From assembly GCF_947568905.1 (NCBI RefSeq), contig NC_079172.1, positions 27,032,001-27,096,000 of the forward strand: a DNA stretch of 64,000 bases, given 5' to 3'. A model generated the notes under the pieces. The model was not told where the DNA came from, did no database searches, and saw only the letters and a program-made list of their open reading frames with translations. This stretch comes from Ostrea edulis. Taxonomy: Eukaryota. Of this stretch, positions 28,519 to 52,183 are shown piece by piece. A program made the position numbers and the translations under genes. Within the stretch, counting starts at the first letter, position 1. Each line of letters starts with the position of its first letter.

Positions 28519-30755
28519 TAACAGGGTGAAAAATATCCCAAAGTTAGCATCTAAACTGTGAGGACAGATCTCTATTAGCCTATTCATTGAATGTGGGAAT
28601 TATAATGCAGTTGATGTAAACAGTGCATTGTGACATCATATTCAGTGTTTGTGTTTAGCATTTACAAACATAGGAGATGTGGTACAGGTACGTTAATCGA
28701 GGAGTGATTATATATTAAGAAAATGATTTACATGCTTTTACAGATGTTATGTAACATCTCAGAATAACGTGAACTAGGGTAGACAAGATGCAAAATGGAG
28801 AATTACATGTCTATGCGATTGTATTCAAATGGATACCATTTGAACCAAAATTTTCAAGTTCAAAAGGCATAGTTTAGTTTTTTATCAATTTTCTTTATTT
28901 TCCTTTTAAACATGTATATACGTGTTACCTACAGGGAGAGCTCCGCTCTCACGGCCCTTCGGCTGTGATAGGGCTTTGCCCTCTATTAAAGGGGTACTAG
29001 TCTTCTCAAAGTAAGGAGGAAATGATTTTTCTAGCAAATATTTATGAAGAAGAGACGTTTATGGTGGTAGCGTGAGAAAAATATTGTTACTAGAATAAAC
29101 ATCATGGAAGTTCAGGTATATAGTCATAATGGATGGTGGTTTCATGTTAAACATAAAATTTAACTCCCTTTCTATTGCTCAAAATGGTTCTCTCTACCCT
29201 CTTTTCTGTCTGACTGTCTGTCAGCAGCCTACAGGTCTTGCATGCTTTTATGTTGCCTTGTAGTTGTTTACTTATGGGGTGTTCACTATCCTACTCCGAG
29301 AATACATAATTAAATAGGAAATTAGGTTGATGATTTTTTAATCCGATCGAGTTAAATTGCATAATTTGCATAAAGTGTATAGCTTATATAGCTTGATATG
29401 AAATACACACGTTTTACTCCTGCAGTGATATCCAAAGAAAATGACATATATATAGCTTTAAGGCGAATTCCACATACATATCAATGTCTAAGGGGGATCT
29501 AGAATTTTTCATAGGGGAGTGGGTTCCACTCCATACAATTTTTTTTCAGGAGTTCCAATTTATACTCTGGACAAAATGAAATAGATAAGCATAATATTTA
29601 TTTTTGATCTAATCTAACCTTGGTATGACATAGGCTCATCGAATAGAAAAGATTATCCATTGAAGACACAAAAAAAACCTGGAAAACCTTTGTAGTGTAT
29701 TGAAAATCACACCATAGGAGATGGAAAAAAATCTTTATAAATATCTATTTAATAGCAAAGTGATGATGTATCCTTAAATTTTATGTGATAATTAATCCTC
29801 ATGCAGCATAAACATAGTTTTCATAGTTTAGAGAAATTAGAACAATATCATATACAGAATCCTATCTTTAACTCGCTGATTAAATATTTTGTAATTTAAT
29901 GTAGATTTAACTTAGCTACTGTTAGACCCCCCCCCTCCCCCTTTTAATAAAGTTGATTAGAATGGCATCTCCATGTAAAAGTAGTTCATTTTGCATATTT
30001 TCTTGTTCATTCAATTCAAGTGTCAAGAGATGAATTGATCAGATTATTTTATCATGTTTGAAAGGTAGACATTACTAAGCCATTCTCAAGAGCTTGATAA
30101 AATATATAGCTAAATCAAGATGTACCAGACGGGTTAAAGTATCATATAGTGTAGTCTCAAGTTTGCTTAAAGCATCCTCTTTGTTCAGTTCAGGCCTACA
30201 TTTGTAATCCAAAGTTTTTCCATGCTGCATAGGAATCACATTGATGTATGCTACAACAAAGGTCAACATCTCTTACAATTATTCTGAACAACTAGATTGA
30301 ATTTTAGTCAAATTTTGAATATATGCAAGTATTCCCTAGTAGTGTAAATTTGAGTTTGTTTGAACCATCAGCCTTAACATAGTTTGGGGCCACAATTGTG
30401 GACAGAGTAAGACATATTTCTACAAAAACAAAACAATCCACATCAGTGTTGTAGCCCTTTGACCATGTGTTCTCCGGATAATATCATAATATAATCTGAA
30501 GTAATCTAATTTCTATTTGTTTCAGGTCAATAGAAGTTTGGACAAAACCACTGTGATTGTTGTATAAGACCGGCTTCCTTTGAAAACGGAAAAGATCCCA
30601 AAATGCTTGTATTTTATTGGAACATGTAACAGAATCTCCTGTACTCAATGGAATACAAGTTTTTAGATTTTAATATGCACTGTGCATTCTCATATTTGTA
30701 CTAAATGAGAGCATATAGTGATACTATAGTTGTCCTGATTTCAAGATTTTAAACA

Positions 30756-31239
30756 ATGGAACAAAGTAGAACTGATAAAACACAGTCAGGTGAATTGATC
30801 AATAGAAAAGATCCTAGGAATTCCCCAGCTCTATGGGTACACCATAGACCGAATGCTGGGAGCAGCTCACAAACTTCAAATGAACAAAGTGTTGTAGGAA
30901 TCTCCTCACAACTACAGACAAATGCCTGTAGATCAATTAGTAGTACCCAGCAGAAGACATTTCCTGTTATTCAATTGAATGCAGATACCAACCAAACTGC
31001 ACTAGAATTCTTCAAAATTGAAAGTACTTCTTCTCCCTCGTGTCATGTTGGAACAGTGCGAAATATTATACCCAGTAATTTACAGTGCAGCGTGTCAAGG
31101 TCAGATAGAGATGACCTCCATCAGACAGTTATACCAGCCTTTATTGTAGTGTCAAAGAAACGGAAGCTAGGAAATGAGGTCATATGTATTGATGAGGAGG
31201 AGGAGGAGAATTCTTCTGGCAAAAAAGATGGCAAACCAG
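30756..31239 (+). CDS. Coding exon 1 (S/T/Q-rich; KKRK NLS-like; VICIDEEEEE SIM-like)
   Basis: ORF 30756; acceptor TTTCAAG ending at 30745; donor CCAG|GTAACT. Confidence 0.75.
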
Positions 31240-31954
31240 GTAACTACAAACTGACGGAGAGATGGTATATGGTCATTTGGCATTCATCTTAGTAGCTATA
31301 GAACGAGCTGTTTGGGGAAATATTTGGGGTATCCCAATTTTCAGTTCTACAGCTCTCTGCTTCATAATGTATGGATAGAATCATTGAAAACAATCTCTAG
31401 CTCATTGGAACTATACTTTTATCCCAGCCAAGTTTTCAATGGTGTGTGTTTATAGGTCACTGCTGATAAAGTAGTGATTGGATATTTGAATACTTGCGTG
31501 GTCATTTACATTAAAAATGGCTGATTATAAATGAATCCTAGTCGGGTTTATAATGACATGTTTCACTACTGATGTAATTACATCTGGAGATGGTTGGATG
31601 TGGTTGATGACTCGACGGTCCATGAACAACATCAAAGCTGTTTTAGGTGTCACTACTGATGTAATCCATAGATTGAATTTTTGAGTACTTGTTAGGTCAC
31701 ATTACCCAGAAATACAATGGATACAAAAGTCTTATGTGAGCTACACCACCCAATATCAATAATAAACACATAGTCAATCATTGTATAATTTTCTTTCTCT
31801 CTCTCTCTGATATCATGCACATGTATATATACAAATGTAGATATATACCGCATAACGGGTATTTTCTGCAGATGGAAAGTTTTGCAATTTGATTCATAAA
31901 TAGTAGCAAATTATAGTCTGGGTTTGACAGTTTCCAATTTCTTCGATTCGTTTT

Positions 31955-32011
<57 letters not shown>

Positions 32012-35000
32012 GATTGTTATTTTGTGGATTTTCCTATCTGCAAAAAGTGGACAACTGCGGAAAATACCCATTATATAGTAATACCCATTTACCTATGTAG
32101 CAGTAAGATAAGTTCGATCGCCTGTGGCCAGATAGCTTGGTAGAGCACCTGATTAGGGGGATCTGAGTTCAAATCCTAGTCTTGTCCATTTTCTCTCTTC
32201 CTGTGACACCTAAAACAGCTTTGATGTTGTTGATGGACTGTCAAGTCACCAACCGTATCCAACCAGCTCCAGATGTTTTATCCCCTAATCTTCGGGACGT
32301 AAGGACACCAGAAGGTGATCAGTTTTGGTTTGTATAATTATTTAAGCTGTTTTTATCTTTTCAGATCAGAGTACTAAGGCAACATCAAAGACAACACACT
32401 TAATTCAACCAGTGGTTGGCCAAGGAAGTGTTGGCAGCCAAGTGCTCATTCAAACACAAACTATAAGCACAGCTGGCTCTAGAGTACCCCAGCAACCTCC
32501 TACAACTATCCCCCAGTCCTCTAACCTTATAAGCAAACTCAACTCAACTCAGCCCAACCCAGCAATTAGTACTCAATCATCAAAACAGACAACAAAAGAC
32601 ATCTGCAAAATAGGAAATATAGATAAAGAAAATGTGCCCACTTCAGCCATACTGTCAAGACAGACTGGTTCTCTCCCAAATGCTGGTTCCTTGTGCTGCA
32701 GTAAGGAATGTACGTACTCATCCTCATCGATTCCAGCAACAGACATATCAATTGGTAAGTTCATGTTAGCAATAAAAAAAAGAGAGTGAATTTTGTAGAT
32801 TTCATTTGTTTTGCTACAGAAATTTGATAATGAGAGAAAAGCTGCCAATTAATTGCTTGGTCAAAAGGCTAAAGTTCAAGATCTTGGTCAGTGATTCAAT
32901 ATTGCTAATGTTTTGGATGCAACAGCAAGAGTCTCTCAGCCTCATACTTGCTACATACATGTACATGATTATTGTAGGTGGGAGGGAAAACATAGCTGGG
33001 ATTTTAATCTGTATGAAAACTTTTAAAGTAAATAACAATAGAGTAGTGTTTCAAAAGTTCTCTTTATTTTGTATACATTTGACCACAGATTTACCTGTAT
33101 AAAAAGCTAGCACCACACCAGACTAAGTTCACTAAAGGTTTAAACCCTGGTATGGACACAACAAAGTGAATTCCCTATTGAGAAAGTACTGCTTTTCTCT
33201 TTTGATTTATTAAAAAACTATAAAGTTGTAAAGTTTTTTTTACATGAAGGAGATATTTCCCCTTAATCACCTCCAATGGTCATCCCTAATCTGCATAATT
33301 TTCTCAAAAACGAAATTGTTCAGTATTTAAATTTTTTTTCCACAAAATGAAAATATTCAACCTATTTTCCATGGTAAATGGGGCAGAGCATCGGGCCATT
33401 AGAAGGTACCCTGGTTTTTTGGGGTTTTTTTTCCATATTGGATTATGAATGTCCTTTGGACATATTTCTAGTTTATATTCAATGTTAACTAAATAAGTAG
33501 AAACACTGTGAGAGCATGACACCCTGTCATTGAGTACTACTAATCATTCATAATTATTGCTTTAATAATGATGAATACAATGGCATGGTTACTCAATCAT
33601 GAAGCTTGGACTTAGGGGGTGCTAGTACCAAGTGATTTGGTAGAGTTAAACCTCTTTTGTTTGAGGGTGAAACCTGTACTAATTGATATAATTGGTTCAG
33701 TATTACTGTGTCTGTGAGGTGATCCATCAGCACCTTGGCTTGTGGGAAGGATATAAATACAGATGTAGTACTAATAAGGCAAGAATGATCAAACCAAACT
33801 TGGCATACTTGTTCCCCAATGTGAGAGGAAGATTCCTGTTATTTCTCAAGATTAAAGGTCTTGGGTAATCAAAAAGTGAAAATAGTAATAATGGGTTAGT
33901 ATTTTCAAAGTTGTATGTCTTCCCCATGGTGTTGGTTCCTAGTCTATTTAGGAACATAATATTTTGCTTCCCAAGTTATATTTTGTTTGAGGGAAATCTT
34001 TCTACTTTATGATATTTAACAGAGCCATTTGAGAAATAACATTTTGTTAAAACTTGCCAATACAGTATTAGAAACATACATGTATATTCTCTTGCAACTG
34101 CATCCTTGATTGTTTGAAATTGTGTTTAGTCAAGTTTTATTTTCTACATAATTTTTCATTGTCAGAACCATATTTTGACCAAAGAGTGGTTTATTTGGAT
34201 ATTAATCTTTGATTACTAAGTACTGCATTGGATGGGGTTATTGCAGTATGAGCATTGAAAGCAATGATGGAGGGGGGGGGGGGGGGGGGCAGAGATGAAA
34301 AGAATTATAAATGAAATGATATGTGATGATGTCTGGACAATTCTACTCAGCAGTAGTGTGTATGTTGCATCATCTGGTTTCATGAAGGATTATTTTCCAG
34401 ACTTTTGATTATATGATAAAACAATGTATGCTTTTTTTGAAAATGTTACTTAAATGAGAAAACTGTTATTATAATGTTTTTATATCAAAGTTGAATAAGT
34501 AAATTAGTTGTCATACTTTCATATTGTATGTGTTGAAATATTAATGTTGTTTTCATCTATATTATAGATCAGAGTACATCAACATCACCAGATATGTGCA
34601 ATGTCTATGATAATGAGGAACCAATATCACTCATACAGCAAGGCATTCCATTGATTGGTAACTCCCAAGATCTCTGTGAATCAAACCCAGGTAGGATATT
34701 TGTTTTGTTTTTGCAGGGTTCAAAGTTCAAATCCTTTGGGGAAAGGATTTCTTCAGACTTTATTGCTGGTATAGAAATCATGGACTTTACACTGAGTGAT
34801 GAAATCCTACAGGGGAAGGATTAGGTATAGCAAAATCCTACAGATGGACTTTACAATGGCTAAATCCTAAATCTTCAGGATTTTATAGTGGTTAAATCCT
34901 AAATATGAAGGACTTTATAATGTTTTATTCCTAGAGATGAGTAACCTAATGGTTCAACTCATAATGGTTGAATTCTGCAGATGAAGTTCATAATAGTTTT

Positions 35001-38000
35001 AAAGTCCTTTAAGAAAAAAATATAATTATGGTCATAGGTTGATGAAGAAAGCAACGATAAGGCCAATAAAAAATTAACTAATAGTTTCTCAGGCCCCGCC
35101 ACATCCGTTGAAAAAGATACCACATGGAATTGTTTTTCCACTTTATTGTTGTTTATTTATGTAAATGAGGTAACTCTTATGTAATAAAATTTTAAGTATC
35201 TTTTTGATCAAATAATTATTGAATGCATACTCATTTATGTGCAAGTGTTTAAAAATAATAGTATAAACCTAATAGTAAGTAATGTGAAGCTATTTTTGAT
35301 ATACATGAGGAAGAAAAGGGTAACTCATTCTACAGTCAGCATAAAAAGAAAGATAACTCATGCTTGTCTGCCTCATCAAAATTTGAAACTTTTGGCCTGA
35401 GAAACTATTTATTAATTTTTTGTGACCGAATTTGGTTAACTTTATAGGGTCCACTTTCCATTCGGACAGAATAATCTAAAAATATACTGATAACAGCATC
35501 AATGACCTGCATATTTCACAATTCCTCATGATTTTCCCTGAATATAGAGGGCACTAAGTATGTTGTAGTCCTTTATTCATGATGTCAGTACTAGGAATGA
35601 TAGAACATTTGTTATTACATGTATATTTGATTACAATATCAAGTGTCGGTTCAACATGTTCAAGGAATTTTTATGTCACCGTAATCAGAGATTCTGGGAC
35701 ATACAGGTTTTTTTTAAAAGTTAAGTGTAATGATTGAAAATGATACAATCGACCATTAATGTTCACCACTAATTTTATGTCTGTGTCCTTTTGCGAATTT
35801 TTATGCCACCATAGTCAGAGATCCAGGGACATATAGTTTTCTATCTGTTTGTCCATAAAAAACTTTAACCAGTTACCTTCGCCATAACTTTAGAATAGAT
35901 GGTGAAAAGCCTTTCATATTTCACTTGTGAATTCTTTGTGACAATTAAAGATTTTTTTTTTGTACCAAAATTTTTTACCTTGACATTTTGGCCATATGGG
36001 GGGTAGCAGTGTTTCACAGACATATCTTGTTGTGCAAGCAATATTGGGTCATAATGTAACAATGTACATGTATGTAATTATAAAGATAATGAATATGAAA
36101 CAACAAGTAAAAAACAACTAATGAAAAAAACCCAGTTTAAAGCAAGAAAATAACCTCTAAAGGGTTAGTAAAAGTACTAATAAGTATCGTCGACTGCCCT
36201 ATTTCAGTGACTGACCAGAATCGGTGACCTGTTGTTTACGTGTGCGCGTTGTCGTTTCCGGGTGTAGATTGCGTCATAAATTTCGCTGTAGTGTTTGCAA
36301 ACATATATAGAGTACGTCTTCAATTTTTTTCCGAAAATGAACTACTAGAAGGAGAGTATGCAAAAAATCAACACGAGCACCCCAAAAATAAGCCCATTTA
36401 CTTATTACTTTTTCAAGCAAACCTTCAAATTAATATAAAGTATACCAAAAGTCTAGAATTTTACACTATGTTATTTTATTCATTGACATTTAAATGTACA
36501 TTCCTCCTGTATATACGTTTTAACAGTTAAAAACTTTGGCAAACCTGTATTAACAATGATTACCGAAATAGGTGACGTCACCGTTTTCGGAGCACAAAGT
36601 GACATGTTTTTTGTTACAAAAATATATTCAATTAACGTACCAATGAATTTGGAATTTTTGGATGAAAGTAAAGGAATTTAATTACTTTAAAGGTAGGTGT
36701 GTAATTTATCTATTTAATCCAAGTGATTAATGAGAAAATCATGGTTTATCACTAAGGTCACCGAAACTGGTCAGTCGACGATACTAAAAGTACTAGTAAA
36801 AAGCATTAAAAGTACATTAGAACTGTACTATGATTGATGAACTTACAATGATATTTGTATCATATCATTATATAAATTTAGACTGTGGCATGAAGTAAAA
36901 AAAAATTTCTTTATTTGTTTATGTTTCAGAAATGTTGAAAGAAGTCCCAAGGATTTGTAAAGTGTGTGGTGAAGAATCCAAGGGGAGTCCATTTGGCGTC
37001 CCTGCCTGTCTTTCCTGTTCGGTATGATGCCGATCTAAATTATGTAAAATTGTATAGCTGGCTGGATGAAAACACACTTCATTTACATAAATTAAAAGTA
37101 AAGTGTAATTTTGAAAATTCAATGAGGAAACAAGCTCTAAAAATAGATACACGATAGCAGGTGTAATGTGCATATAGATGTTTGTTAGGGTTTGCTTTTC
37201 TTGATTTTATGTCCCAGTATAAATGGCACATTTTGTTCGCTAATTCATAAGTTATGAAATTCTTTTTGACAGGTGTTCTTCAGGAACTGTACTGAAGACG
37301 ACTTGAAGATAAGTAGACATCGACAGTACATGGGGCGCTGCGGTTGTCAGCTTTGTCATCTCTTCTGTTGCTACTTACGCGGGATGAAACCAGAAAGTAA
37401 TTATCAAACAGTCTGACACTCACATTAACTATGCTACTCACAAACAAACAGTGTGACACTCACATTAACTATGCTACTCAAATGATTCTAATTTCTCTAG
37501 AATCATTCATGTATGTAAATGTCAATATATATTGTGGTCAATGATTTTTTAATAAATTTCCTCCAAATTTTTTATGGGATGTAGAGTCAATCAGTAGTTT
37601 TAAATTGAAATATCATGATTATACACTTTAGTATTAGCTAAGTTCCCAGAAAAGAATGATTTCACACCATGATCACTCTATATAGAGCTAGAAATTTTCA
37701 TTAATAAATGTATAATGGATATGTCATAAATCTCTGTTTACAATAATCATAGGCATTGTTTTCTTCATTGTACCTATGTAATTTTCTTGCTTGATTTGTA
37801 ATTTTAATGAAGTATAATGTTTTATATTTCAGATTCAGATTTTCTGGTGTGTACAGTTTGTAGTAAACCTTTCATATTAAGATACTTTCTGATACAGCAT
37901 CAGAAAAATTGCCAGAAGTCTCCAGTCAGTCCAAAATGTGACACATGTGGCCTCACGTTTGCTACAGACAGTCAACTGAAACAACACAAGAAGAGCAAGG

Positions 38001-41000
38001 TCTTTTGTGAAAAGGACAGTACTGCTGGTAAATGCTTTAATTTATGAGGTGGCCAGTCATTACACTGTGCAGAAGATTTTCAACCACTCTTTAAAAAACA
38101 TTTCATCATCTGTTGTGGCCTCATCCTAACCCCATGAGCCAAGATTTGAAAGAAAAAATATGTAAGGAATGCATAAATGTTCTGGAGAAAAAAGATTTCG
38201 ATTGAGATGTGAAATTTTGAATATTTTTTTATTTCATTACGAAAATCTGATCCCTTATCACGGTCCCATCTTCACTCTTGTGCCCATGATTTGAACAAAA
38301 TTGAATCTGTTGCACAAGAGGATGCATGCACCTCATTTTTACAAATTGTAGTCTTGATCTCTAAAGGAGATTTTTTTATGCATTTGCCTGCAAACTTTTT
38401 CTTATAGTTCATCCCTATGGTGTGGATGAACTTCCTTTCAGTATTGTTTTGACTAATTATAATCCTCTTTTTAAAATGAAGATTTGTAAAGATCAAGGAT
38501 GTATAAGGAAAAAAATATAATGATAAACAGCTACACTACGAATTCCCAAGACATTATGATAAACAGCTACATTACGAATTCCCAAGACATTATGATAAAC
38601 AGCTACACTATGAATTTCCAAGACATTATGATAAACAGCTACACTATGAATTCCCAAGACATTATGATAAACAGCTACAATATGAATTCCCAAGACAATA
38701 TTATGATGAAAAGCTACACAAGACAATATTATGGCCCATAGGGTCAGGATGGAGTCACATTTTCACATTTGGAATCTTCAATATCCTTTCATGAATGACA
38801 AGGTTATAGTTTGCACAACATGCAAGCATCCTCATGTATTGTAGCTTCCGGGTTGTTCGTATCAGGATAGACCCATAATTTTACTTAGGAATATAAAATA
38901 TTAATGTACATATGAAAATATCTTCTAAAGACAACATGAAAGTGCCTCCATGTAAAGTCATCTTGGTTCAAACCTTGGCTGTACAGTCCAAAATGGCCAT
39001 TATAGGTCACGACAAGGGTTCATAGTTGTGCATGAAATTTGACAAATTTTGTCCCTTTTTGTTATGAAAATTAAGATTATACAGAAATAAATTAATTCAT
39101 TTTTGTTCTCAAAGAAGGCTATATTTGACTAAAATGCAATTACTGTACATTTTTGTGCAGTGTAGATTTATATGTTCATGGCCAGGCCTGCTTCTTTAGG
39201 GCAGAGTTTTGGGTACCGTAAGGGTGAAGTGACATACCTTCAATGATATATAAACAAGAATATATAGTTTGTCAATGTTGTTTGGTAATATTTATGTTTA
39301 TTTAATTTAATTACTTGCATGACTCTTTGTAGGGTTCAAAGGGGGGGGGGGGGGGGGGGGGGGGGGGTTACTAAAGAGATCCTTAGAAATATGCACATCT
39401 CCAATGTATACAGGAAATGAGAGAATATAAATGTTTGGTTGATTCAACAATTTCAAATGAAAATAAATGTCTCAAATTATTTCAGGAACCGATGGGAAGT
39501 ATAAATGCGATATCTGCTGGGAATCTTTTTCATTGCTGGGTGCCTTAGTATTGCATCGGTACACACACCTAAAGGTGGATGGTGAGTGTGTTTTAAAAGA
39601 TTGTTATGTAGAGTAAAGAATCTGTGAAACAGAGACATGTCCATGCACATTAGCACATGAAATTGTAATGAGAATTCTTTGATTTTCATGGTCTTCAAAT
39701 TCCATGTTTTTGGTATAGAGTACAATTTTATTGGTATGTAAATTTCAGGAGAACTACACTTTGTTTTCTCCTCTTTCATAAGTATTGGGCATCATTAGTC
39801 ACATGATTCCGTGGTCTTGCTTGACCACCAAAAAAACCCAGTCAAAATTGGTGTACAACAAATTGTGATACCTCGGTGTATCTTTTCTTTCACTTTCTCT
39901 TTACAAAATAATTATTTTACGGGTTTTTTTTCATTTTAACTATTATAGACGAGATGACAGAGATGGAAAATTCATTAGAAGTAAAGACATTCCAGATTAA
40001 TCCAGAAAACCCTATTATCATTGATGATTGTGAAGAATTAATTGTCATTGATGTTGAAAAAGAAGGGAAAAACAACGACTCGGAAACTAATGATGAAAGT
40101 GGGATTGCAGATAATGAAATCAAAACTCACCAAGATGGAATCCGAACACATATTGATAATGTTGAGCATGAGGATCAAAATTCGAATATTCCAGAAGAAA
40201 GAGAAAATATTAGACATCTTGTAGATGGTCAGCCTGGGAGCAATAGTGAAAAAATGTGTGTTGATGATAGTGCAGTTTATTCTGAGGAAACCGAAAGCAG
40301 ATTACAATCTGGAACACAATTATCACAGGGATCCCAGAAATGCTCAACTGTCAACGACAAGAGTGAAATAAGCAGTGATGACACAGGAGAAATGGAGTCA
40401 GAAGAAAACCATGTAAAGACAGTGATTGGTGAAGAAGAGACGGAGAAAGAGTCTGGTCTTGGAAACAGCTGCAGTATAATTGAATACAACGAAGAATCAT
40501 CAGATGAACTCCTGGAGGAGGAGGATGATGAGTACATTCTGGTCACCTTTGACTCCAGTGATGAGGAAGACAATGTTAGTACTGTGAATCACTGTGGAGC
40601 TGACTGTATGGATAACAATGAACAGGAACATGATAATTCAAAAGATCACGAGATTCCACCCACTGCAGATGTGATTATAAGAAATAACGAAATGTCCAGC
40701 CAGTTTGCCGAATCGGGATCCACAACTATGCTTCCCGTTTCAACATCACACCTGGTGATGGAATCAATTGCTGGTACAGACAAGAATATAACTGAAGGCA
40801 CCAAACAAGGCAATGCAATCCCAGAAGTCAGTGAAGTTTCAATGGAATGTCAACAAGAAATTTCAGAAGAAAAAAATGGTTATGAAAATACAGATTTTGA
40901 AAAGATGCAACCATCTATGGAAATAGAGGAGGAAGAAAAAGCGTGCATGGTGAAAACTAAATCTAACACGAATATTCAGAGTGCACAATCAGAAACAGGA

Positions 41001-44000
41001 GAGACATGGGAAAAAAATAATTCCCCAGAAAGCAGTAACAAAGATTCTACTGTTACTGTTGATAAAGCAACAGCCTTACAAGACAGTTCATTTTCAGCTG
41101 ATCAATCAGGATCGAAATCGCATGTGAAAGTAATCACAAATGAAGATGGAGGGGAAAAGCTAGAGGTCCATTTTGTTCTGGATGATAAGACGAAAACTGG
41201 GACACCTGATATCCTTGAGAGTTTATCCTCATCAGAGAATGCTGTCACCGTTGATGAAATTTCCAGTACAGTACCAGATGACATTAATGTAGAATATCCA
41301 TCAAACGAAAGTGCCATAGATAAGGAAAACATGACTCCTGGAATTCAACCTCCACAGAATGATGACAGTCAGTGTAAGACGACAGGAAAAAGTACAAATG
41401 AAAATATGAATACCTGTGAGGAATCAGCAGAATTGTCGACTCTCTCAGACAAGCAGTCAGATGTTGGGAGGAAAGATGGAGCAAGTATGCCGCTTATTCA
41501 AGATCAAGAGAAAAGTGAAAGCAAACAAAAATATCAGAAAAATGAAGAACAAATGGCTACAGCAGACATCATTTGTTTATCTTCAGATGAGGAAGAGGAA
41601 AATGTCAAGGAGAAAAGTGCTGGGTAAGTAAACCAAACGGCAGCATAAGAACCTTCATCTTGAATGGCGGGAAGAACGGCATCAACAGCTCATGTTTCAA
41701 ACACAGGCATTTATTATGTTCCAACAAAACCACATATTCATGTTCCTACACTAAATACTAGTATTCTGTATAGGTACTTTTAAAATTTGTAATGTATTCT
41801 CTTTAGAGGTATATCCATCATATTACAACTGCAGTGCAGTCTAATTAAATGTAGTACGGCATAACAAATAATAAAACGTAGGGGCTAATTTTAATTAGAC
41901 TGAACTGCAGTGAAAATAACATCTAGAAATAAAAGTACACAGGTGAATTTAAAGCAGAATGACAATAGATTTTAATCAAAAATGTGAAAATAATCAGGTG
42001 TGAATTCAATACTGTGTACAGTATAAGTAGGTAAAAGTCAAGGTCAAATTTGCCCAAGTCGCATTTAGCCATGGTTTAGCACTAATAGAATCCTCCATTT
42101 GTACAAATGTGTGATAGGGAAATTCCACCAAGGGAACAAGTTTCGAAGTTAGGATGAGGCTTTACAGAGTCCTAGACAGCGAATCTTGTTCCAGAGGTGG
42201 AATTTCCCTATCCCACACATGTAAATAATGAAGGATTATTATTCTCACATTTTATCCACAGTTTAGTCAATGCATAGATTCAGGAGCTTTAAGAAAATCC
42301 TCATTTGAACTTCAATACGAAAACTAATTAGACAGGCAGAGAGAGAGCATAGCCGATAATGACTTACACTTGAAGCGTAAGCTAAAAAAAAAAAACACCA
42401 AGGTTGTCCACCAAAAGCTACATGAAATTGAAATTTTAAGAAAAATACGAAATATTTTACTTCACTATGTAACACAATTAATAGAAAATATATATCACAA
42501 TCAATGATGTTGCAGCAGTGTATTACAGAAAAATCTCTCATACATGTAGCTGTCTCACATGGGTAAAGTCGATATAACACTGGTGTTAATGTGAGAAATA
42601 GTTTTATTAGTTATTTAAACAAAACATTTACAATGTATGAGGTAAAATGCCACTACTGTGTAACAGAGATATACAAGACCCACACGTAGCACAAAGATTG
42701 CTAATGACTACAGTCTGTCATGACACTGAGTCAAGTTCATTTAGTCAAGGTTAATGAGAAAAAAGTTAGAAATATATTTGTTTCAGGCCATTTGTAGAGG
42801 ATAAGTATTACTAGTTGATACTTGGCTAGATTTTTTATGATTAAACAATGTGATGTAAGTCTGAATTAGTTTCAGAAAGGCACAAAGTTTAAGTTGCCAT
42901 GTCTCTTACCAATTTCAGGGACACAGGCCAAGAAACTGTACAGATAACTGACGACTCTTCGACAAATGCCCAAACATGCAAGGTCATACAGAAAGCATCC
43001 AAAAACAATATTTTGGGAGATGATCCTAAGAAAGTACTCAGAAATGAGTATTTGGGGAGTCATGTTAGTGAGCTCAATCCATCTTCAACAGGAACAACAA
43101 GTCGGTCTCACAAGTTAAGTCACATGGATATCGTCATTGATTTGGACCCTGAGGAAGATTCGTACATTTGTTACTTATGTAAAAGCAAATTTCCTTCTGT
43201 TCAGGACATCCAGCTGCATTTAAAGAAAGTTCACTCTTATTTCAATAACAGTATCATCCTAGACGGTTTTTTCTGCTGTCATTGTAAGGATAAGTTCAAT
43301 TCTTTAGGGGAGCTTTCAATTCATGAGTCAACTGTTCATGGTTTCAAATTTTCATGCCCTTTGTGTGGGATTCACCAGAAAGACCATGAACTATTTTTAA
43401 CCCATATTATGGAACATCTATCACCATGGATCCTTTATTGTGTTTTGTGTAAACTGGAATTTAGAAAGGAAGATGAATTCAAGGAACATAATTCTATCAA
43501 GCATGGTGGCAAAGTGGTGTTATCAGAGTCCTTGAAATGCTGTATTTGTGACAGTTTCTTTGCTGACAAAGGGAAATATTATGAACATCTTAGAATTTTT
43601 CATGATAAATTGTTTAAGTTTCCGTGCAAGGTCTGCTTTCAAAGTTTTTGTACAAGATCTGCACTGAAAGTTCACAGAAGCTCTCTTGATAACTTTCTTA
43701 GTGGATCAAGAACCAAAATAGCAGAATTCATTTTGATTGATTCTAATGCAGTTGACGTTAAAGTGATCAGTGAAATTCCCTTGAGTAACTTTCATCGCAG
43801 ATATTTATCAACTCCAACAACCTCAGAAAAGGCAAAACTTGCTTATAAAAGAATAGACCAAGAATCCATACTTAGAAAATGTAGTTTGACAGATACAAGG
43901 AAAGGGATTGTTATTAGTGGTGTAAATTCAAGGTCATTGCAGAATGACGAAAGTGCAGACAGCACTTTGGAGAGCAGACAAGGTCAGCCTGTGACAGATA

Positions 44001-46672
44001 TCAGCACACATGGAGATCCAAATGACATGACGAATAGGAATATTGCATGTGAAGAGGAGAGCTTGCCAGATATACAGCGTCCTAAGCAGTCAGAAACCTC
44101 TGCCAGTAGTATAACTGATCTGGTGTCTGCAAATGACGTCACATCAACTGCTGAGGACATGGTTACCAATCTTAGAATTGTTGGACACAAAACGGATAAG
44201 GAATCACAGGGACATGAGAAGGAATCACAGGGACATGTGAAGGAATCACAGGGACATGAGAAGGAATCACAGGGACATGAGAAGGAATCACAGGGACATG
44301 TGAAAGAATCACAGGGACATGTGAAGGAATCACAGGGACATGAGAAGGAATCACAGGGACATGAGAAGGAATCACAGGGACATGAGAAGGAAACACAGGG
44401 ACATGTGAGTGAAGAATTAGCATCAAACAGAGACCGGATTTCAATGGAGGTTGAATGTAAGGATACATCTTCAGTTACCACTCAGTCTACAACATCAACC
44501 TCAATAAATGACACAGAACCTGCCAATCGACCGTTCAAAAATCCTGAAAAAAGAAATTCAGTTTTGCCAACTATTGACGGGAGTGGCATTTTAGATGAAT
44601 CCACTCCAATGTTAACAAGCTGCGAACAGGGGTCATCCGGAAGAATGCCTGATAGTCAGACAGTCGATTTAACTACAATAACTGATGCAGACTTTATAGA
44701 GGAGGATTCAGGACAATGTAGCAATGGGGAATCTTTTATTCCTATTGGTAATATCATGACCATTCAACCAAAAGAGATCCGTGAGAAAGGTAAGATGCTG
44801 TGTCTATCATTAGAATTTAGATAAATAGGGGGAAATTGATTGTTATGTTCCTTATGCACCCAGATTCCTGCAGAAATCAGGTAGAGGTTGTTATGTGGAT
44901 GTGTTAAGTTTAATTGTTTTATGTATTTTATAATAATTATAGGAACTTCTATTGTCAGTGTGTCCATGTACTACAGGATTGTATGCGCTGCAAGTTTGTT
45001 CTTTTCTTTTTTCTTTTGTATTTTACTTCAAACTTCTGTGCAGCAGCGTATCATTAGTCAAAAAGAAAAGAAAAACATACTGAATGCAGAAATTTAACAA
45101 TTTCTTTTTGTTTGATATGACGTGTTTATTCATAAATGCATTTAGTTGATGAGCTCCTTTGCTATTTATTCTAACAAGTCTTTTTTCCATTTTGTAGAAA
45201 ATACCGGAGTCATGCAACATAGAGGAAATGTTGACAGTGGTATGAAAGATTCAACCATTTTCAGTTTTGATTGTTTAGTAGAGAAGGTATTTGATGAATA
45301 TGAGCATAAGACGAGAGACGCTTGGAGTAAAGAGGTCATTGTTGTGGAAGACGGAATGCCAGATAGTGGAGAGGCTGGAGAATACCATTCGTCCCAAAGG
45401 ACATTGAGAAGAGTTCAAAATAATGAAAATTTACCTACATCTTCGTCCAAGAGTTTGAATTCATCTCAGGATGAAAATATACCAGTTGAGATAGAGAATG
45501 TAATTTCAAATCTCCTCAGCTATTGCAAGAGACCCAAGATGATGTCATCACAAAGAAGGTCTTCTAATGCTGTCGAACGTATCTCCCCAAAAGTGAATTC
45601 TATACCTTATAAAGGAGCAAAGGGAATGAATAACTTTCCAATATTGCAAGGCGATCTAAAACATAACAGTGTCCCAGTTATGGTTGATCAAACAACCGAA
45701 AGGAATTTAAATGTTGACCAATCTAGTGATTCGTTGAGAAGCTTATCATCTCAGGAACATTCCAGAACAGAAGAAATGGATCATCAAGTAGCATCAACAC
45801 CGGATAATATAAAGTCAAACAATTTCTTTGTGACGAAATCGGTGTTATCTGTGCTTGAAGGCAATCCTTCATTGTTGTTGAATGACTGGAAAGAAACTTT
45901 GGAGGAAAGTGGCAAAGGGACGCGCCTGCGTGCTATGCATCCAGATTTGAACGATTTTATCAAACTTACAAATTGGAAATCTTCGCCACTTGTACTTGCT
46001 AAAGTCAATGCCCTTTTGCACAAAAAATTTCCTGTAGACAATAATATATCTAGAGCCGATACAACCAGAAGTAAAGATGGTCGCATTTTGATTGGAGAGC
46101 GAAAGGAATTATTTGCTGATATAAAAAATACTTTGGAAAAATTTGAGGATGACCCACATCTGAAAAGAAATCCCATTAATTTTGAAAATTTGGATAGAAT
46201 GCAATGTACAAAGGATGAATCCCTATCTAAAGAGAAGCACAATATGAAGAATACTGTGGAGGCTCAGAAAACGTACGTTTACAGCCACACTGACCTAGAT
46301 AATGCTGTAAAGCGGCTTAGTTCAGTTGTCCAAGCTATTGCGAAACGAAAGCTGGATGAATGTGGTCCTCCGGACTCAACTGAAATGCAAGTTGAACAAC
46401 CCAAAAAGAAAATCAAGATCGTTCCGGCAAAAGATGTCCTAAATCAGGATCAGGTCGTTGTTTCTATGGAGGGGGAAATGAAAAATGATGGAAATGAACA
46501 GGGGCCTTCTTCAGAAACGTTGAATTCTAGAAAATTGTCAGACCCATCTGCAGTAGTCATGGCTTATCCAGTAACAGTCACACAATTGTCAACGACCGTT
46601 CCACAAGTAGATATTAACAACACACTTGGTGCTGAAGAAGGTGGAATGCAGTTTGACATTGTAAAAGAGTAA
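30756..46672 (+). CDS. 2174-aa nuclear protein: divergent nuclear-receptor C4 DBD + C2H2/C2HC zinc fingers + SIM-like motifs (10 coding exons)
   Basis: Exons 30756-31239, 32365-32754, 34568-34690, 36930-37021, 37273-37396, 37833-38027, 39486-39581, 39949-41623, 42919-44789 and 45198-46672 are all GT-AG with compatible phases and sum to 6525 nt, open to TAA at 46670-46672. AATAAA at 47370-47375. Confidence 0.8.
31956..32008. repeat. (CA)n(TA)n compound microsatellite
   Basis: Direct reading. Confidence 0.9.
32118..32207 (+). mobile_element. tRNA-derived SINE remnant
   Basis: A-box TAGCTTGGTAGAG and B-box GAGTTCAAATCC, but no complete cloverleaf. Confidence 0.55.
32365..32754 (+). CDS. Coding exon 2 (low-complexity S/T/Q/P)
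   Basis: TTTTCAG acceptor, GTAAGT donor, phase 1-1, open frame. Confidence 0.8.
34568..34690 (+). CDS. Coding exon 3
   Basis: TTATAG acceptor, CCAG|GTAGGA donor, phase 1-1, open frame DQSTSTSPDMCN...SNP. Confidence 0.7.
36184..36784. mobile_element. MITE with TAA target duplication (PIF/Harbinger-like)
   Basis: TIR GTATCGTCGACTG...GGTGACC paired with GGTCACC...CAGTCGACGATAC; TAA on both flanks. Confidence 0.75.
36930..37021 (+). CDS. Coding exon 4: nuclear-receptor-type zinc finger 1 (C-x2-C-x13-C-x2-C)
   Basis: Encodes EMLKEVPRICKVCGEESKGSPFGVPACLSCS; TTTCAG acceptor; donor GTATGA in phase 0. Absent from the ORF track because it is short. Confidence 0.85.
37273..37396 (+). CDS. Coding exon 5: NR recognition helix and remodelled zinc finger 2
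   Basis: Encodes VFFRNCTEDDLKISRHRQYMGRCGCQLCHLFCCYLRGMKPE, matching the NR patterns FFRR and CQxCRLxKCxxxGM. Confidence 0.85.
37405..37480. repeat. 40-bp-period tandem duplication just after the DBD exon 5 donor
   Basis: CAAACAGT(C/G)TGACACTCACATTAACTATGCTACTCA x2. Confidence 0.85.
37833..38027 (+). CDS. Coding exon 6: two C2HC/C2H-type zinc fingers
   Basis: CTVCSKPFILRYFLIQHQKNC and CDTCGLTFATDSQLKQHKKSKVFC; canonical splice sites. Confidence 0.85.
38517..38720. repeat. Intronic 36-bp minisatellite, about 5.5 copies
   Basis: ATTATGATAAACAGCTACACTATGAATTCCCAAGAC units. Confidence 0.9.
39486..39581 (+). CDS. Coding exon 7: one C2H2 finger
   Basis: YKCDICWESFSLLGALVLHRYTH; TTTCAG acceptor and GTGAGT donor. 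Confidence 0.85.
39949..41623 (+). CDS. Coding exon 8: long acidic disordered region with SIM-like motifs
   Basis: 557-codon open frame; TTATAG acceptor; GG|GTAAGT phase-2 donor. Confidence 0.9.
42919..44789 (+). CDS. Coding exon 9: six C2H2 fingers (last degenerate) plus 7-aa tandem repeat
   Basis: Fingers run from YICYLCKSKFPSVQDIQLHLKKVH to FPCKVCFQSFCTRSALKVH. The phase-2 acceptor TTTCAG|G at 42918 matches the previous donor; donor AAG|GTAAGA. Confidence 0.9.
44198..44407 (+). repeat. Coding 21-bp repeat x10 (KESQGH[E/V])
   Basis: AAGGAATCACAGGGACATG(A/T)G x10, in frame in exon 9. Confidence 0.95.
45198..46672 (+). CDS. Terminal coding exon 10
   Basis: TTTGTAG acceptor in phase 1; 491 codons to TAA. 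Confidence 0.88.
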
Positions 46673-47936
46673 CTGCAATATGTGACTTTTGAAAGAATTG
46701 AAAACATCTATATTTTAATACGTGTATGTGTTTTATATCTGTGTACTAGTGATTACTAGTATGGCCCAGAATTGGGACTATGCTGTTTTAGTCCCGTTTA
46801 TCAAGAATGAAGAAGTCATGGGGGTAATTCTTTTTCTTAAAAAGTGTAAATTTAACTGATTTATAATGAAATAATTTTTTTCCAAGTCTTATTTTCACCA
46901 TACATGTATGTTGAAAATGCATCAATCACTTTCAAAATGTCCATGAATATACGCACATGTGTGGTTCTACTATTTTTAAGTTTTTTATGTATATTTGATG
47001 TATACGCTGTGAGGGTTTAAAAGTGACATTGTTTCATGGTAAGTGATTAATGTATATTTTTGTTCTTTTGTTTTTAAAACAAAGTTAAGTTTTAAGTTAA
47101 TATATGATCTTGCAAAAAAAGAATTCCGTTCAGGGATGTTGATTTTCACCATTTGTTTGAATTGTATGATTATGAGATAATACATGTTTAATACTATATA
47201 TTTCTATGTATTATGATGTACTGTCACAAGGGATATATTGTCAAAGCTATCATGCAATTTTATTTTACTGTTACATGTTATAAATTGATATGCTGAGAAG
47301 TATCTGTTATGAATAATGTAGATGTACATGTAGACTTATTGATGAAATTTGTAAAGATAAATCATGATAAATAAAATTAATGTTGAATTGAAATCAAACC
47401 TAAGTATCAAATGCCATGAATATCCAATAATATAGGATACATTGATGGGTATAGAATAATATAGGATTCACTCAACTTTATTGATGGGAAGCTGTTTTAC
47501 TATTTCTTTAGAAAATAAGATATCTCTTATTTAGAGAGATATCTCTTATTTTAAAGAGATATTACTTATGAAAAGATATCTCTTTAGAAATAGATTGATT
47601 TTATTTGAACTGAAAATTTTCAAAATTTTATTTTTCCATCTTAAATGTTTGCAATGCTTAACTAGGGTGTTTCTAATGGTCAGCTAAAATTTGAATGTCA
47701 GTCGTCGAGGTACAAAAGAGATGCAGCACTCACAATTCTTTGTTATGTACATATAAACAAGGCTCATGCCATGTTTTTGTTTACATAGGTTAAATATTCC
47801 TTTTAAAAAAGTTTCATTTAAAGCAGATTTTTCAATTTACAAATTAATTCTGAACACAATTAAACAGTTTCTAGTCTTTGTAATATCTCATTTGTTTCAA
47901 ACATGATATTTCCTATTAAGCAATCTTAAATGTAAA

Positions 47937-48225
47937 CAAAAACATAGCACGAGCCTTGTTTACATAACAAAGAATTGTGCTGTGTCTTAAAACAGACATT
48001 CAAATTTTGCTGACCATTGCATTTACCGGTAACTTTTTGCCCCGCCCCTAAGCCCTCAGGGGTGCTGGAGACCTGAAATTTACAATTCTTGTCCCAAAGA
48101 TACTTCATACAAAATTTGAAAAGAATTGGACTGGTAGTTATCAACGAGAAGTTAAAAATGTTCAATTGTTGACGGACGACAACCGATTGCAATAGGTCAC
48201 CTGAGTTTACTCCGGTGACCTAAAA
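47937..48225 (+). mobile_element. Helentron-like fragment
   Basis: (GACG)n and CAATAGGTCACCTGAGT...GGTGACCTAAAA end. Confidence 0.55.
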
Positions 48226-49603
48226 AGATAAAACAGATGTTGAGGTGCAATTCTCCAAGACAGTCCCCCATGAGTCGTTGTTATGTAGCTACATGGGCTG
48301 TTTGATAATCCAAAGGGCATCCGGTTATGGGCGATTCTCTCATTTCATTCACAAACTGGCAAAGTATTGTCCCATGTTATTTTTTTTCAAATTATTACGA
48401 TATGTCTTGAAAGTTTGAATTGATTCTGTGTCTACACTTTAAAAGCTTACTAGAAAAAAATATAAATCCGTTTGGTCTAACAACACAACTCAAAATTAAT
48501 GAATGTTAATTGCCCAATTATCTCATTACAATGACGTGACGGTAATGTCCTATATTAAGTTAGTGTTGGAATTTTGAATATATTTCTTAGAAATGTTTGG
48601 AAAATAATGCAATTTAAACTTTTTACTTATTTTCTAAAGAAAATTAATTGAATGCATGGAATACATTGTGGGGAAAACCACTCATGGAATTATTTTTGAA
48701 AGAAAATATTTTGTCTATCAAAACATGTTCCATACCGTAACGCTTCTATTTTCTGCACTTATGATACACCCATGAACTTCATTGACATATTTCCCACCAC
48801 TGCAACATTTTATGACGTCATATTAAAACACATGTAATACTTTCTGAATGATGGTTGCCAGTGAATGCAAGAAGGCAGCAAATAAGTACATTTTCTTCAG
48901 TTGTAGTTAATTAACGTTATCTGTACCGTTCATTGATTTTTGATTAAATAATCCCTAGCAACCAACGATATAGACACATTCATTCAATTAATTTCCAAAG
49001 TAACAAGAATCGCTTAATTAGGACATGATTTGAAAAATATATATGGGATAATGTAAGAAAATATCCATACCACAACACTCCATACCGTCACATCAGTAAC
49101 AATAGCGGTACGATCTATGTTGTGACGGTATGGAAATTCTTTCAATTAAGTTAATAAAATTGATATTATGATTGGAAATTATTTTCAAAATGGCAAATAT
49201 ATAGGTTTTTTAAAAAACATAAAATCACATGAATTTGCTGAAACAGAAAAAGAAATACATGTATTAGGCCTATGGTTTCAAAAGCTTAAATCTGGTGCAG
49301 TGGCCCATGTCAGAATTTTATGTAAGTCTAAGAATGTATGATCTCACAGGGTAAGGGTTCTGACTACTTGTTATTTATATATATAAAGATAAGTCAACAT
49401 TACCGTAGAAAACAGCCAATCTGCATAGCAATGGTAAAAACGGCAGCTAATGAAAAAAATGTATAACATACAAGCTACATGTATCTGTCCTGTTTTGTCC
49501 AGCCAAATGTGCTTGTTTCAATCCCTCTGAACACATTTTTCATGAAATTATTTAAGAATGCAATGAATCAGAGCAGTCTACAGAAATTCGCATAAGTTGT
49601 AAT

Positions 49604-50779: not shown

Positions 50780-51215
50780 TCAATACCCATTCTGAAATGT
50801 TAACTCAACGAGAGAATAGCCCTTATATTCAAAAACTCCTAGAGGACCCGCAGTAAAAGGTGCCCTTTCCTTGTGTTCCTTATCTATCTCAATTTGGTAG
50901 TATCCTGATTGTGCACCAAGTACGGTAAAGTAGTGATTCCCTGATAAATTGTCCACGATCTCAACGTGGGGCAGAGCATAGGCATCTTTTTTCGTCTTGT
51001 TCAGCTGCCTGTAGTCCACACACATTCTCAGGTCTCCATTCTTCCTCCTTACAAGGACTACATTGCTGGAGAATGGCGATTTGGACCTCCTAATCACCCC
51101 TGCCTCCACTAATTCCTGTAGGTGATTCCTAACTTCCTGGAACATTGATGGGGGAATACGTCCACATCGCTGCTTAAAAAGTGTAGGGTCCACCAACTCA
51201 ATCCTGTGCTTAACA
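50780..51215 (-). mobile_element. Gypsy/Ty3 RT N-terminal fragment
   Basis: VKHRIELVDPTLFKQR...SPFSSNVVLVRRKNGDLRMCVDYRQLN...KDAYALP...SGYYQI. Confidence 0.85.
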
Positions 51216-52041: not shown

Positions 52042-52183
52042 NNNNNNNNNNNNNNNNNNNNNNNNNNNNNNNNNNNNNNNNNNNNNNNNNNNNNNNNNNN
52101 NNNNNNNNNNNNNNNNNNNNNNNNNNNNNNNNNNNNNNNNNNNNNNNNNNNNNNNNNNNNNNNNNNNNNNNNNNNNNNNNNNN
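52042..52183. other. Assembly gap (142 N)
   Basis: Run of N. Confidence 1.

What the first reader, a model, noticed from the sequence alone, without database searches (positions are those of the whole stretch)
36930..37396. Atypical P-box (CLSCSV) and rebuilt second zinc finger in the NR-like DBD
Seen: finger 1 keeps perfect C-x2-C-x13-C-x2-C spacing (CKVCGEESKGSPFGVPACLSC), followed by SVFFRN. The phase-0 intron falls at CS|VFF. Finger 2 retains CQLCHLFCCYLRGM but replaces the usual C-x5-C D-box with CTEDDLKISRHRQYMGRCG. Established: many NR genes have an intron at CEGCK|GFF, P-box residues set half-site specificity, and the D-box mediates dimerisation. Inference: this is a true NR-derived domain with new specificity (Leu/Ser/Val replacing Glu/Gly/Gly and loss of the base-contacting Lys), altered zinc ligation (His or extra Cys), or conversion to a protein-interaction module.
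Basis: partly seen in the sequence, partly recalled or inferred. Interest (0 to 1): 0.75.

Follow-up and report, generated by a model that had tools for sequence, protein, structure and literature searches.

The report
Remodelled nuclear-receptor zinc domain in oyster gene
Two small, spliced and expressed exons of an uncharacterised flat-oyster (Ostrea edulis) zinc-finger gene encode a real but heavily altered nuclear-receptor DNA-binding domain that has lost half the zinc ligands of its second finger and most of its usual DNA-contact residues, so it probably no longer reads hormone-response elements.

Summary
Exons 36930-37021 and 37273-37396 are separated by a phase-0 GT..AG intron. They encode residues 334-404 of Ostrea edulis LOC125657595, a 2174-aa protein with C2H2 fingers and no ligand-binding domain.

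Evidence that this is a true nuclear-receptor (NR) DNA-binding domain (DBD):
- The spliced 71 aa pass Pfam zf-C4 (29.6 bits, E 1e-6).
- Transcript-like contigs from O. edulis and from a relative about 4% diverged lack the introns.
- All three intron phases, and the two alignable intron positions, match a DBD cassette of the Pecten maximus 2DBD-NR gene.
- An alignment-guided AlphaFold model matches only NR DBDs (TM 0.72-0.76, Z 9-10).

Finger 1 and the C-x2-C/helix-3 half of finger 2 are intact. A net deletion of 5-7 residues removes both D-box cysteines. Basic residues at four largely conserved positions (58-75 of 78 other DBDs) are replaced (S30, N35, H59, C62). Cys53 and Cys62 have no counterpart in those 78 DBDs.

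My best reading is an exon-shuffled NR cassette that keeps its fold but has lost canonical half-site reading. It would now serve as an accessory zinc module. This function is inferred.

Orthologue conservation could not be tested, and the negative protein search is weak. The scan had already noted the chimeric gene (s1-311807).

The parts
30756..46672 (+). Host gene LOC125657595 of Ostrea edulis: 10 coding exons and a 2174-aa product (P0055). The product has C2H2 fingers, SIM-like acidic motifs and long disordered stretches. It has no ligand-binding domain.
   Evidence: An exact-sequence cluster look-up found XP_048744231.2 / XP_056005974.1. The locus L001 is identical to the window. Exons were mapped. 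Pfam finds only zf-C4 and C2H2. tblastn with NR proteins finds no second DBD and no LBD.
34568..34690 (+). Upstream coding exon spliced to exon A. The junction is phase 1.
   Evidence: Contig joint 34690|36930 (GT..AG) in X7, X2 and X1. The open frame is continuous across the junction.
36930..37021 (+). Exon A (92 nt): linker, zinc finger 1 (C9, C12, C26, C29 = 36956-37018) and the first five P-box residues CLSCS (37007-37021).
   Evidence: Exon A alone passes the Pfam zf-C4 cutoff with 21.9 bits against 21.1.
37022..37272 (+). Phase-0 GT..AG intron inside the recognition helix, at CLSCS|VFF. This is the same position and phase as CLPCK|SFY and CEGCK|KFF in Pecten maximus 2DBD-NRB.
   Evidence: X7 contig depth drops to zero across 37100-37271, while record 28 covers 66 nt of exon A and then 37272-37396. 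X1 shows a joint 37022->37275.
37273..37396 (+). Exon B (124 nt): V31, the rest of helix 1 (FFRN), C36 (37288-37290), the shortened loop with H46 (37318-37320), C53-G-C55-x2-C58 (37339-37356), helix 3 with H59, C62 and C63, then G67 M68 K P E. The exon ends in phase 1.
   Evidence: HMMER alignments show two gaps that remove both D-box Cys. Contig joint 37396|37833 in X7, X2 and X1.
37833..38027 (+). The next exon, which encodes two C2H2-type fingers directly after the NR-like domain.
   Evidence: Pfam zf-C2H2 and zf-C2H2_jaz matches. Contig joint. Frame.

Best explanation
SHOWN. The two exons are a genuine nuclear-receptor DBD cassette inside a non-receptor gene, LOC125657595 of Ostrea edulis. 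That gene encodes a 2174-aa protein rich in C2H2 fingers. The cassette is transcribed and spliced as predicted. It is bounded by phase-1 introns on both sides, so it is symmetric (216 nt = 72 codons). It is split by the phase-0 intron typical of NR DBD genes.

The cassette keeps all four Cys of zinc module I, the FF core, the conserved Arg52, and the C-x2-C pair, helix-3 Cys and GM of module II. A net deletion of 5-7 residues has removed both D-box cysteines.

INFERRED.
(1) The cassette reached this gene by exon shuffling or duplication of an NR DBD cassette into a phase-1 intron.
(2) The domain still folds like an NR DBD around zinc site I and the helix 1/helix 3 core. Zinc site II is either rebuilt from C55 and C58 plus two of C53, H46 and C36, or it is lost.
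(3) The canonical base and phosphate contacts are replaced: K to S30, R to N35, R to H59, K/R to C62, and H/Y to P20. Net charge is +3 against a median of +7, and the D-box dimer surface is gone. The domain therefore no longer reads AGGTCA- or AGAACA-type half-sites as a dimer. It would act as an accessory zinc module next to the C2H2 fingers that follow it, either in weak or non-canonical nucleic-acid binding or in protein contact.
For: - Pfam zf-C4: 29.6 bits, E 9.7e-7, profile positions 2-69 of 70.
- The best PDB sequence matches are all NR DBDs.
- All 40 language-model neighbours are zf-C4 clusters.
- Contigs lacking the introns show GT..AG joints 32754|34568, 34690|36930, 37021|37273 and 37396|37833.
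- The RefSeq protein contains the identical peptide.
- In Pecten maximus 2DBD-NRB, the introns fall at CLPCK|SFY and CEGCK|KFF (phase 0) and three residues after GM (phase 1). Its second-DBD cassette also starts in phase 1.
- The AlphaFold model built with an alignment has pLDDT 81.5 and helices at 27-38 and 56-65. It matches only NR DBDs, with TM 0.72-0.76 and Z 9.1-9.8.
- The query keeps 15 of the 19 columns that are at least 80% conserved in 78 other DBDs. The four it misses are the two D-box Cys, the FFRR Arg and the CxxC-Arg.
- Cys53 and Cys62 occur in 0 of 78 other DBDs at those positions.
- Net charge is +3 against a median of +7, and only 3 of 78 are as low.
Against: - No orthologue sequence could be examined, so selection on the Cys/His pattern is untested.
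- The single change seen in the related species, T to C at 37274 (Val31 to Ala, in the P-box), comes from one low-depth contig. It hints at weak constraint there.
- The NR-like fold comes from a model guided by an NR alignment. The single-sequence model is uninformative, with pLDDT 46. The remodelled loop 41-50 has pLDDT 57.
- No coordinates were available to measure Cys/His geometry.
- Some multi-DBD proteins with equally odd P-boxes exist, and their DNA binding is unknown. Loss of canonical contacts does not prove loss of specific binding.
Confidence: 0.6

Rival explanations
1. Neofunctionalised sequence-specific reader. The remodelled domain binds a new DNA (or RNA) motif through its new helix-1 surface (L27, S28, S30, V31, R34). 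It has a rebuilt second zinc site (for example H46 or C36 with C53, C55 and C58). It works together with the adjacent C2H2 fingers as a hybrid DNA-binding array.
For: - Structural positions are kept despite about 65% divergence from any known DBD.
- The new Cys53, His46 and His59 lie where replacement ligands would be needed.
- The domain lies immediately upstream of C2H2 fingers.
- A non-C4 second finger (CHC2) is conserved in flatworm HR96b, a gene reported there as essential for female sexual development. This shows that such changes can be functional (PMC8363021).
Against: - Basic residues at four positions that are basic in most of the 78 other DBDs are lost, and net charge is only +3.
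- The loop that would carry the new ligands is modelled with low confidence.
- The P-box Val31 apparently differs (Ala) in a species about 4% diverged.
Confidence: 0.2
2. Decaying passenger. An NR DBD cassette was captured recently or long ago. It is carried in the transcript because it is frame-neutral (216 nt), but it has no function of its own. The loss of the D-box Cys and of the contact residues is neutral erosion.
For: - No orthologue with this domain appeared among 1.84 billion representatives or in the word search.
- The host protein has no detectable relatives for its C2H2 region, which suggests a fast-evolving lineage-specific gene.
- DNA-contact residues and two zinc ligands are lost.
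- A P-box residue differs in a close relative.
Against: - The frame is open and the splice sites are intact. Transcript-like contigs of both O. edulis and the related species lack the introns, so the cassette is spliced into the mRNA in both.
- Of 19 highly conserved columns, 15 are kept, including every ligand of site I, although overall identity to the other DBDs in the alignment is only 25-39%. This uneven pattern is not what neutral decay predicts.
- The negative search is weak. The O. edulis protein itself was missed because its cluster representative is a fragment without the domain.
Confidence: 0.18
3. Artefact or chance: a mis-annotated or mis-spliced stretch that only resembles an NR finger.
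For: Exon B alone has no Pfam match. The whole-protein zf-C4 score is just above the cutoff, 21.7 against 21.1.
Against: The Pfam E-value is 1e-6 for the spliced domain. The intron positions match a real NR gene. Independent contigs from four runs are spliced as predicted. The motif is expected 0.06 times per window by chance.
Confidence: 0.02

Closest known systems
Nuclear-receptor DNA-binding domain (Pfam PF00105 zf-C4), for example the GR, AR and RXR DBDs
   Same: The first finger is C-x2-C-x13-C-x2-C. The recognition helix has the FF core. The second finger keeps C-x2-C at the start of helix 3, the ninth Cys and the GM motif. The intron splits the P-box region after CxxC-x, and the predicted fold matches.
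   Different: There is no C-x5-C D-box and no ligand-binding domain. K, R, R and K/R at conserved contact positions are replaced by S30, N35, H59 and C62. Net charge is low. The domain sits in the middle of a 2174-aa C2H2 protein.
First DBD of spiralian 2DBD-NRB (P-box CLPCKS; Cg2DBD-delta of Vogeler et al. 2014; Wu and LoVerde 2023, PMC10497141)
   Same: Leu is at the first P-box position. Cys follows F-x-x-R/N directly (R-N-C-T-x-D against I-R-C-T-K-D). Both have G-R-x-x-C-Q-x-C before helix 3. The phase-0 intron position is identical, and the phase-1 exon end is three residues after GM.
   Different: 2DBD-NRB keeps the Lys (CLPCK), the Arg, a full four-Cys second finger, a second DBD and an LBD. 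Profile scoring does not favour this group: 30.5 bits, against 31.5 for canonical and 33.9 for multi-DBD domains. Descent from it is therefore only a lead.
DBD-only receptors (NR0A: knirps, knrl, eagle; C. gigas CgNHR40 and CgNHR41)
   Same: An NR DBD without a ligand-binding domain (PMC4070562).
   Different: As far as I recall, those are small proteins with canonical C4+C4 fingers and basic contact residues. Here the domain is internal to a C2H2 protein and its second finger is remodelled. No sequence of CgNHR40 or CgNHR41 was available to compare.
CHC2 second finger of parasitic flatworm HR96b (PMC8363021)
   Same: A naturally occurring, conserved departure from the four-Cys ligand set in NR zinc module II.
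   Different: There, a single Cys-to-His change occurs in an otherwise full-length D-box of a complete receptor. Here, both D-box Cys are deleted along with part of the loop.
Multi-DBD proteins found here (P0002 from a mite with 3 DBDs; P0003 with 5 DBDs plus an LBD; P0004 with 4 DBDs plus one C2H2-like finger; P0005; P0006; P0011)
   Same: NR DBD cassettes are multiplied or combined with other domains. Their P-boxes lack the Lys (for example CYPCTK, CPECEV, CNACGI). Some copies lack one D-box Cys.
   Different: None lacks both D-box Cys or has the C-G-C motif. None is an orthologue: identity is 28-39%, and the named ones come from other phyla or classes.

Membership tests
Nuclear-receptor DBD superfamily (zf-C4, PF00105) | Sequence score above Pfam's gathering cutoff | tested here: met
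   The spliced domain scores 29.6 bits against a cutoff of 21.1. In the full protein it scores 21.7 bits.
Nuclear-receptor DBD superfamily (zf-C4, PF00105) | Zinc module I: C-x2-C-x13-C-x2-C | tested here: met
   C9, C12, C26 and C29 are present, along with the conserved G18, G22 and V11.
Nuclear-receptor DBD superfamily (zf-C4, PF00105) | Zinc module II: C-x5-C-x9-C-x2-C | tested here: not met
   Only the C55-x2-C58 half is present. Both D-box Cys fall in alignment gaps.
Nuclear-receptor DBD superfamily (zf-C4, PF00105) | Gene structure: a phase-0 intron one residue after the fourth Cys, and an exon end in phase 1 three residues after GM | tested here: met
   The same positions and phases occur in both DBDs of Pecten maximus 2DBD-NRB, locus L002. 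Only this one reference gene was examined.
Nuclear-receptor DBD superfamily (zf-C4, PF00105) | Double treble-clef fold with perpendicular helices 1 and 3 | tested here: inconclusive
   The alignment-guided model is NR-like, with TM 0.72-0.76 and Z 9-10. However, the alignment itself consists of NR DBDs, and the single-sequence model failed with pLDDT 46.
Nuclear-receptor DBD superfamily (zf-C4, PF00105) | Binds two zinc ions and a hexameric half-site | not testable with these tools
   This needs ICP-MS and SELEX or EMSA.
Typical nuclear receptor (DBD plus LBD) | Ligand-binding domain (PF00104) C-terminal to the DBD | tested here: not met
   P0055 has no PF00104 match. No LBD-like tblastn hit was found anywhere in the 64-kb window.
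2DBD-NRB, first DBD (CLPCKS type) | P-box CLPCKS and Cys after F-Y/F-I-R | tested here: inconclusive
   The domain shares Leu27 and Cys36 but has S28, S30 and V31 in place of P, K and S.
2DBD-NRB, first DBD (CLPCKS type) | Scores better against this group's profile than against other DBD groups | tested here: not met
   The scores are 30.5 bits for this group, 31.5 for canonical, 33.9 for multi-DBD and 21.1 for 2DBD-NRB second DBDs.
2DBD-NRB, first DBD (CLPCKS type) | A second DBD and an LBD in the same gene | tested here: not met

The most novel reading that the evidence does not exclude
Oysters carry a working hybrid transcription factor. In it, an exon-shuffled nuclear-receptor module has swapped its D-box cysteines for a new ligand set (Cys/His ... 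C-x-C-x2-C). It would read DNA, or dock a partner, together with adjacent C2H2 fingers. That would be a DNA-binding architecture not described for the NR superfamily.
Probability: 0.15. Interest if true: 0.75.

Novelty: new variant of a known kind. Interest (0 to 1): 0.5.

Why it matters
NR DBDs are among the most conserved animal DNA-binding domains. They are almost always studied as part of DBD-plus-LBD receptors. This is a transcribed example in which the two-exon DBD cassette has been placed in an unrelated C2H2 protein and remodelled. Zinc site I and the core are kept, while the D-box ligands and the basic contact residues are gone.

It is a natural experiment on what the fold tolerates. 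It also shows how symmetric phase-1 cassettes spread, by the route that could produce 2DBD and multi-DBD receptors. If the second site proves to be rebuilt with new ligands, it would add a new zinc-finger variant to the family. If the domain is inert, it documents the decay path of a captured DBD.

Surveys that count oyster nuclear receptors by zf-C4 matches would pick up this gene, although it is not a receptor.

Tried and rejected
- A word-index protein search with the 71-aa domain found nothing. It only sees proteins of 39-124 aa.
- The exhaustive representative search gave 11 hits and no orthologue. I do not use this as evidence of absence. The O. edulis protein itself was missed, because the representative of its cluster is a 554-aa genomic ORF fragment without the domain.
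- A word search with the C2H2 region of the 641-aa exon found no relatives within 352-1122 aa.
- A scan of JGI metagenome contigs with residues 330-410 found nothing.
- I tested whether the domain derives from the first DBD of 2DBD-NRB. Pairwise and profile scores do not single that group out, so I keep it as a lead only.
- The resemblance of CLSCSV to the steroid-receptor P-box CGSCKV put AR and GR at the top. The margin over RXR and RAR is about 2-3 bits, so I do not read anything into it.
- Single-sequence AlphaFold was uninformative, with pLDDT 46.
- Model coordinates are not exposed, so Cys/His distances around site II could not be measured.
- The supplement of Vogeler et al. 2014 gives only accession numbers for the DBD-only CgNHR40 and CgNHR41, so they could not be compared.
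- Literature searches for an NR DBD combined with C2H2 fingers in molluscs found nothing relevant.
- Read laying listed only the best-supported differences. Substitutions of the related species inside exons A and B are unknown, apart from the one at the splice joint.

Full report
**What is there**

The window is part of Ostrea edulis chromosome record OX387712.1, assembly GCA_947568905.1. Locus L001, fetched through the annotated protein, is identical to window 28756-48672. The finding lies in LOC125657595, an "uncharacterized protein" of 2174 aa (P0055 = XP_048744231.2 / XP_056005974.1). I found it because the 178-aa first-exon ORF is in the same 90% cluster. Its ten coding exons span window 30756-46672.

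**The observation**

Exon A (36930-37021) and exon B (37273-37396) are flanked by AG and GT. They are separated by a 251-nt phase-0 intron that falls exactly at CLSCS|VFF. The spliced 71 residues equal P0055 residues 334-404. I number them from M1 = 36932.

Finger 1 has the exact C9-x2-C12-x13-C26-x2-C29 spacing. After FFRN comes C36, then a short loop, then C53-G-C55-x2-C58, then H59, then C62-C63, and finally G67-M68.

The bare finger-1 spacing occurs once in the six-frame translation of the window. Simulated windows give 0.06 on average.

**It is transcribed and spliced**

Contigs were laid on 32300-38299 from an O. edulis run (X7) and from two runs of a related organism (X1, X2). The relative is about 4-5% diverged in the neighbouring exons. 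The contigs skip 32755-34567, 34691-36929 and 37397-37832, each with GT..AG ends.

For X7, depth arithmetic and record 28 show that 37022-37271 is absent, while 66 nt of exon A and all of exon B are present. X1 has a joint 37022->37275 with a single C between. I read that as the same splice plus T to C at 37274 (Val31 to Ala) in the relative. It rests on one contig of depth 4.

The five-exon frame is open throughout. It runs straight from the NR-like domain into C2H2 fingers.

**It is an NR DBD by descent**

- Pfam zf-C4 matches the spliced domain end to end, at 29.6 bits and E 9.7e-7. Exon A alone passes the cutoff and exon B alone does not.
- phmmer against PDB sequences returns only NR DBDs.
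- All 40 language-model neighbours are zf-C4 clusters.
- Gene structure agrees. In Pecten maximus 2DBD-NRB (L002), both DBDs are split at CLPCK|SFY and CEGCK|KFF in phase 0. Both second exons end in phase 1, three residues after GM. The second-DBD cassette also begins in phase 1.

The oyster cassette has the same three phases, and the two alignable positions are the same. It is thus a symmetric 1-1 cassette of 216 nt. That is the kind of unit that can be duplicated or shuffled without breaking a frame. No second DBD and no LBD are present in the window.

**What has changed**

These were 2DBD-NRB first and second DBDs, canonical receptors and multi-DBD proteins.

- The domain keeps 15 of the 19 columns that are at least 80% conserved. 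The four misses are the two D-box cysteines (in gaps), the second Arg of FFRR (N35) and the Arg after C-x2-C (H59).
- Position by position: Lys after the fourth Cys is Ser (K in 58 of 78). The K/R before the ninth Cys is Cys62 (K/R in 75 of 78). The H/Y before F/Y-G is Pro20.
- Cys53 and Cys62 have no counterpart in any of the 78.
- Cys36 is shared with 23 of them. These are mainly 2DBD-NRB first DBDs that still have four canonical ligands. Cys36 is therefore not necessarily a replacement ligand.
- Net charge of the C9-M68 core is +3, against a median of +7. Only 3 of 78 are as low.
- The segment between FF and C55 is 5-7 residues shorter than in Lottia 2DBD-NRB (first DBD), AR or RXR.

**Fold**

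With a 26-sequence alignment, AlphaFold2 gives mean pLDDT 81.5, with helices at 27-38 and 56-65. The remodelled loop 41-50 has pLDDT 57. Foldseek and the second-look aligner return only NR DBDs, with TM 0.72-0.76, Z 9.1-9.8 and 62-71 aligned residues.

The alignment consists of NR DBDs, so this is not independent evidence for the fold. The single-sequence run failed.

**Relatives**

The exhaustive representative search found 11 proteins with E up to 1e-3, and none is an orthologue. The real hits carry two to five NR DBDs. Those with a named source come from a mite, a stick insect, Lottia and Tegillarca.

This negative result is weak. P0055 itself was not hit, because its cluster is represented by a fragment without the domain. 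The C2H2 part of the host protein has no detectable relatives in the length range searched.

[quoted passage not shown] Profile scores do not single that group out.

**Reading**

Shown:
- It is a genuine, expressed NR DBD cassette in a non-receptor C2H2 protein.
- Zinc site I and the helix-3 half of site II are intact.
- Both D-box Cys are deleted.
- Most conserved basic contact residues are replaced.

Inferred:
- The cassette arrived by exon shuffling into a phase-1 intron.
- The fold is maintained. The conserved core against changed surface pattern argues against plain neutral decay.
- Dimeric half-site reading is lost.
- The domain is reused as an accessory zinc module beside the C2H2 fingers.

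A rebuilt site II using C53 and H46 or C36 is possible. There is a precedent for a non-C4 module II in flatworm HR96b (PMC8363021). Without coordinates, zinc measurements or orthologues, it remains open.

The rivals are a new sequence-specific reader (0.2), a decaying passenger (0.18) and an artefact (0.02).

**Novelty**

The gene is annotated but uncharacterised. I found no paper describing an NR DBD joined to C2H2 fingers, or an NR DBD without both D-box Cys. This library is incomplete.

I rate it a new variant of a known kind, of moderate interest. The scan had already noted the chimeric gene as a whole (s1-311807). I confirmed its architecture independently.

Noticed in passing
P0002, P0003, P0004, P0005, P0006, P0011: These proteins carry three to five tandem NR-type DBDs, more than the described 2DBD-NRs. 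P0003 (5 DBDs) and P0011 (4 DBDs) end in an LBD-like region. P0004 has four DBDs (one of them truncated), one C2H2-like finger and a SAM-like C-terminus. Named sources include the mite Dinothrombium tinctorium and the stick insect Bacillus rossius. Many copies have P-boxes without Lys, and some lack one D-box Cys.
   Followed up: partly
window 30756-46672 (P0055 residues 142-155, 698-712, 1042-1056, 1131-1142): The host protein has several motifs with a hydrophobic core followed by an acidic or Ser run (VICIDEEEEE, ILVTFDSSDEED, IICLSSDEEEE, IVIDLDPEED). They look like SUMO-interaction motifs. There are two C2H2 clusters, about three fingers at 411-497 and five or six at 1144-1315. From memory, this resembles SIM-rich zinc-finger proteins such as ZNF451. 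I did not test this.
   Followed up: no
window 35100-35500 and 35900-36900: Contig depth reaches 150-400 in all four runs, with many loose ends at 35911, 35944 and 36789. This indicates high-copy repeats filling the intron just upstream of exon A. Exons A and B themselves are at single-copy depth.
   Followed up: no
window about 44170-44420 (within exon 9, 42921-44789): There are about nine tandem copies of a 7-aa unit, KESQGH(E/V), in the coding sequence.
   Followed up: no
window 57943-59040 (-), 50780-51196 (-), 52475-53221: There is an intact-looking 365-aa Tc1/mariner-type transposase ORF, plus reverse-transcriptase-like ORF fragments. An assembly gap of 142 N lies at 52042-52183, which I did not fill.
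   Followed up: no
protein cluster of P0055: The 90% cluster that holds the 2174-aa RefSeq protein is represented by a 554-aa ORF fragment from a genomic contig. Domain searches against representatives can therefore miss whole eukaryotic proteins. This is a caveat for any absence-of-relatives claim made with that tool.
   Followed up: yes
window 37274: In the related species (run X1), the spliced contig reads C instead of T. That changes P-box Val31 to Ala. It rests on one contig of depth 4.
   Followed up: partly
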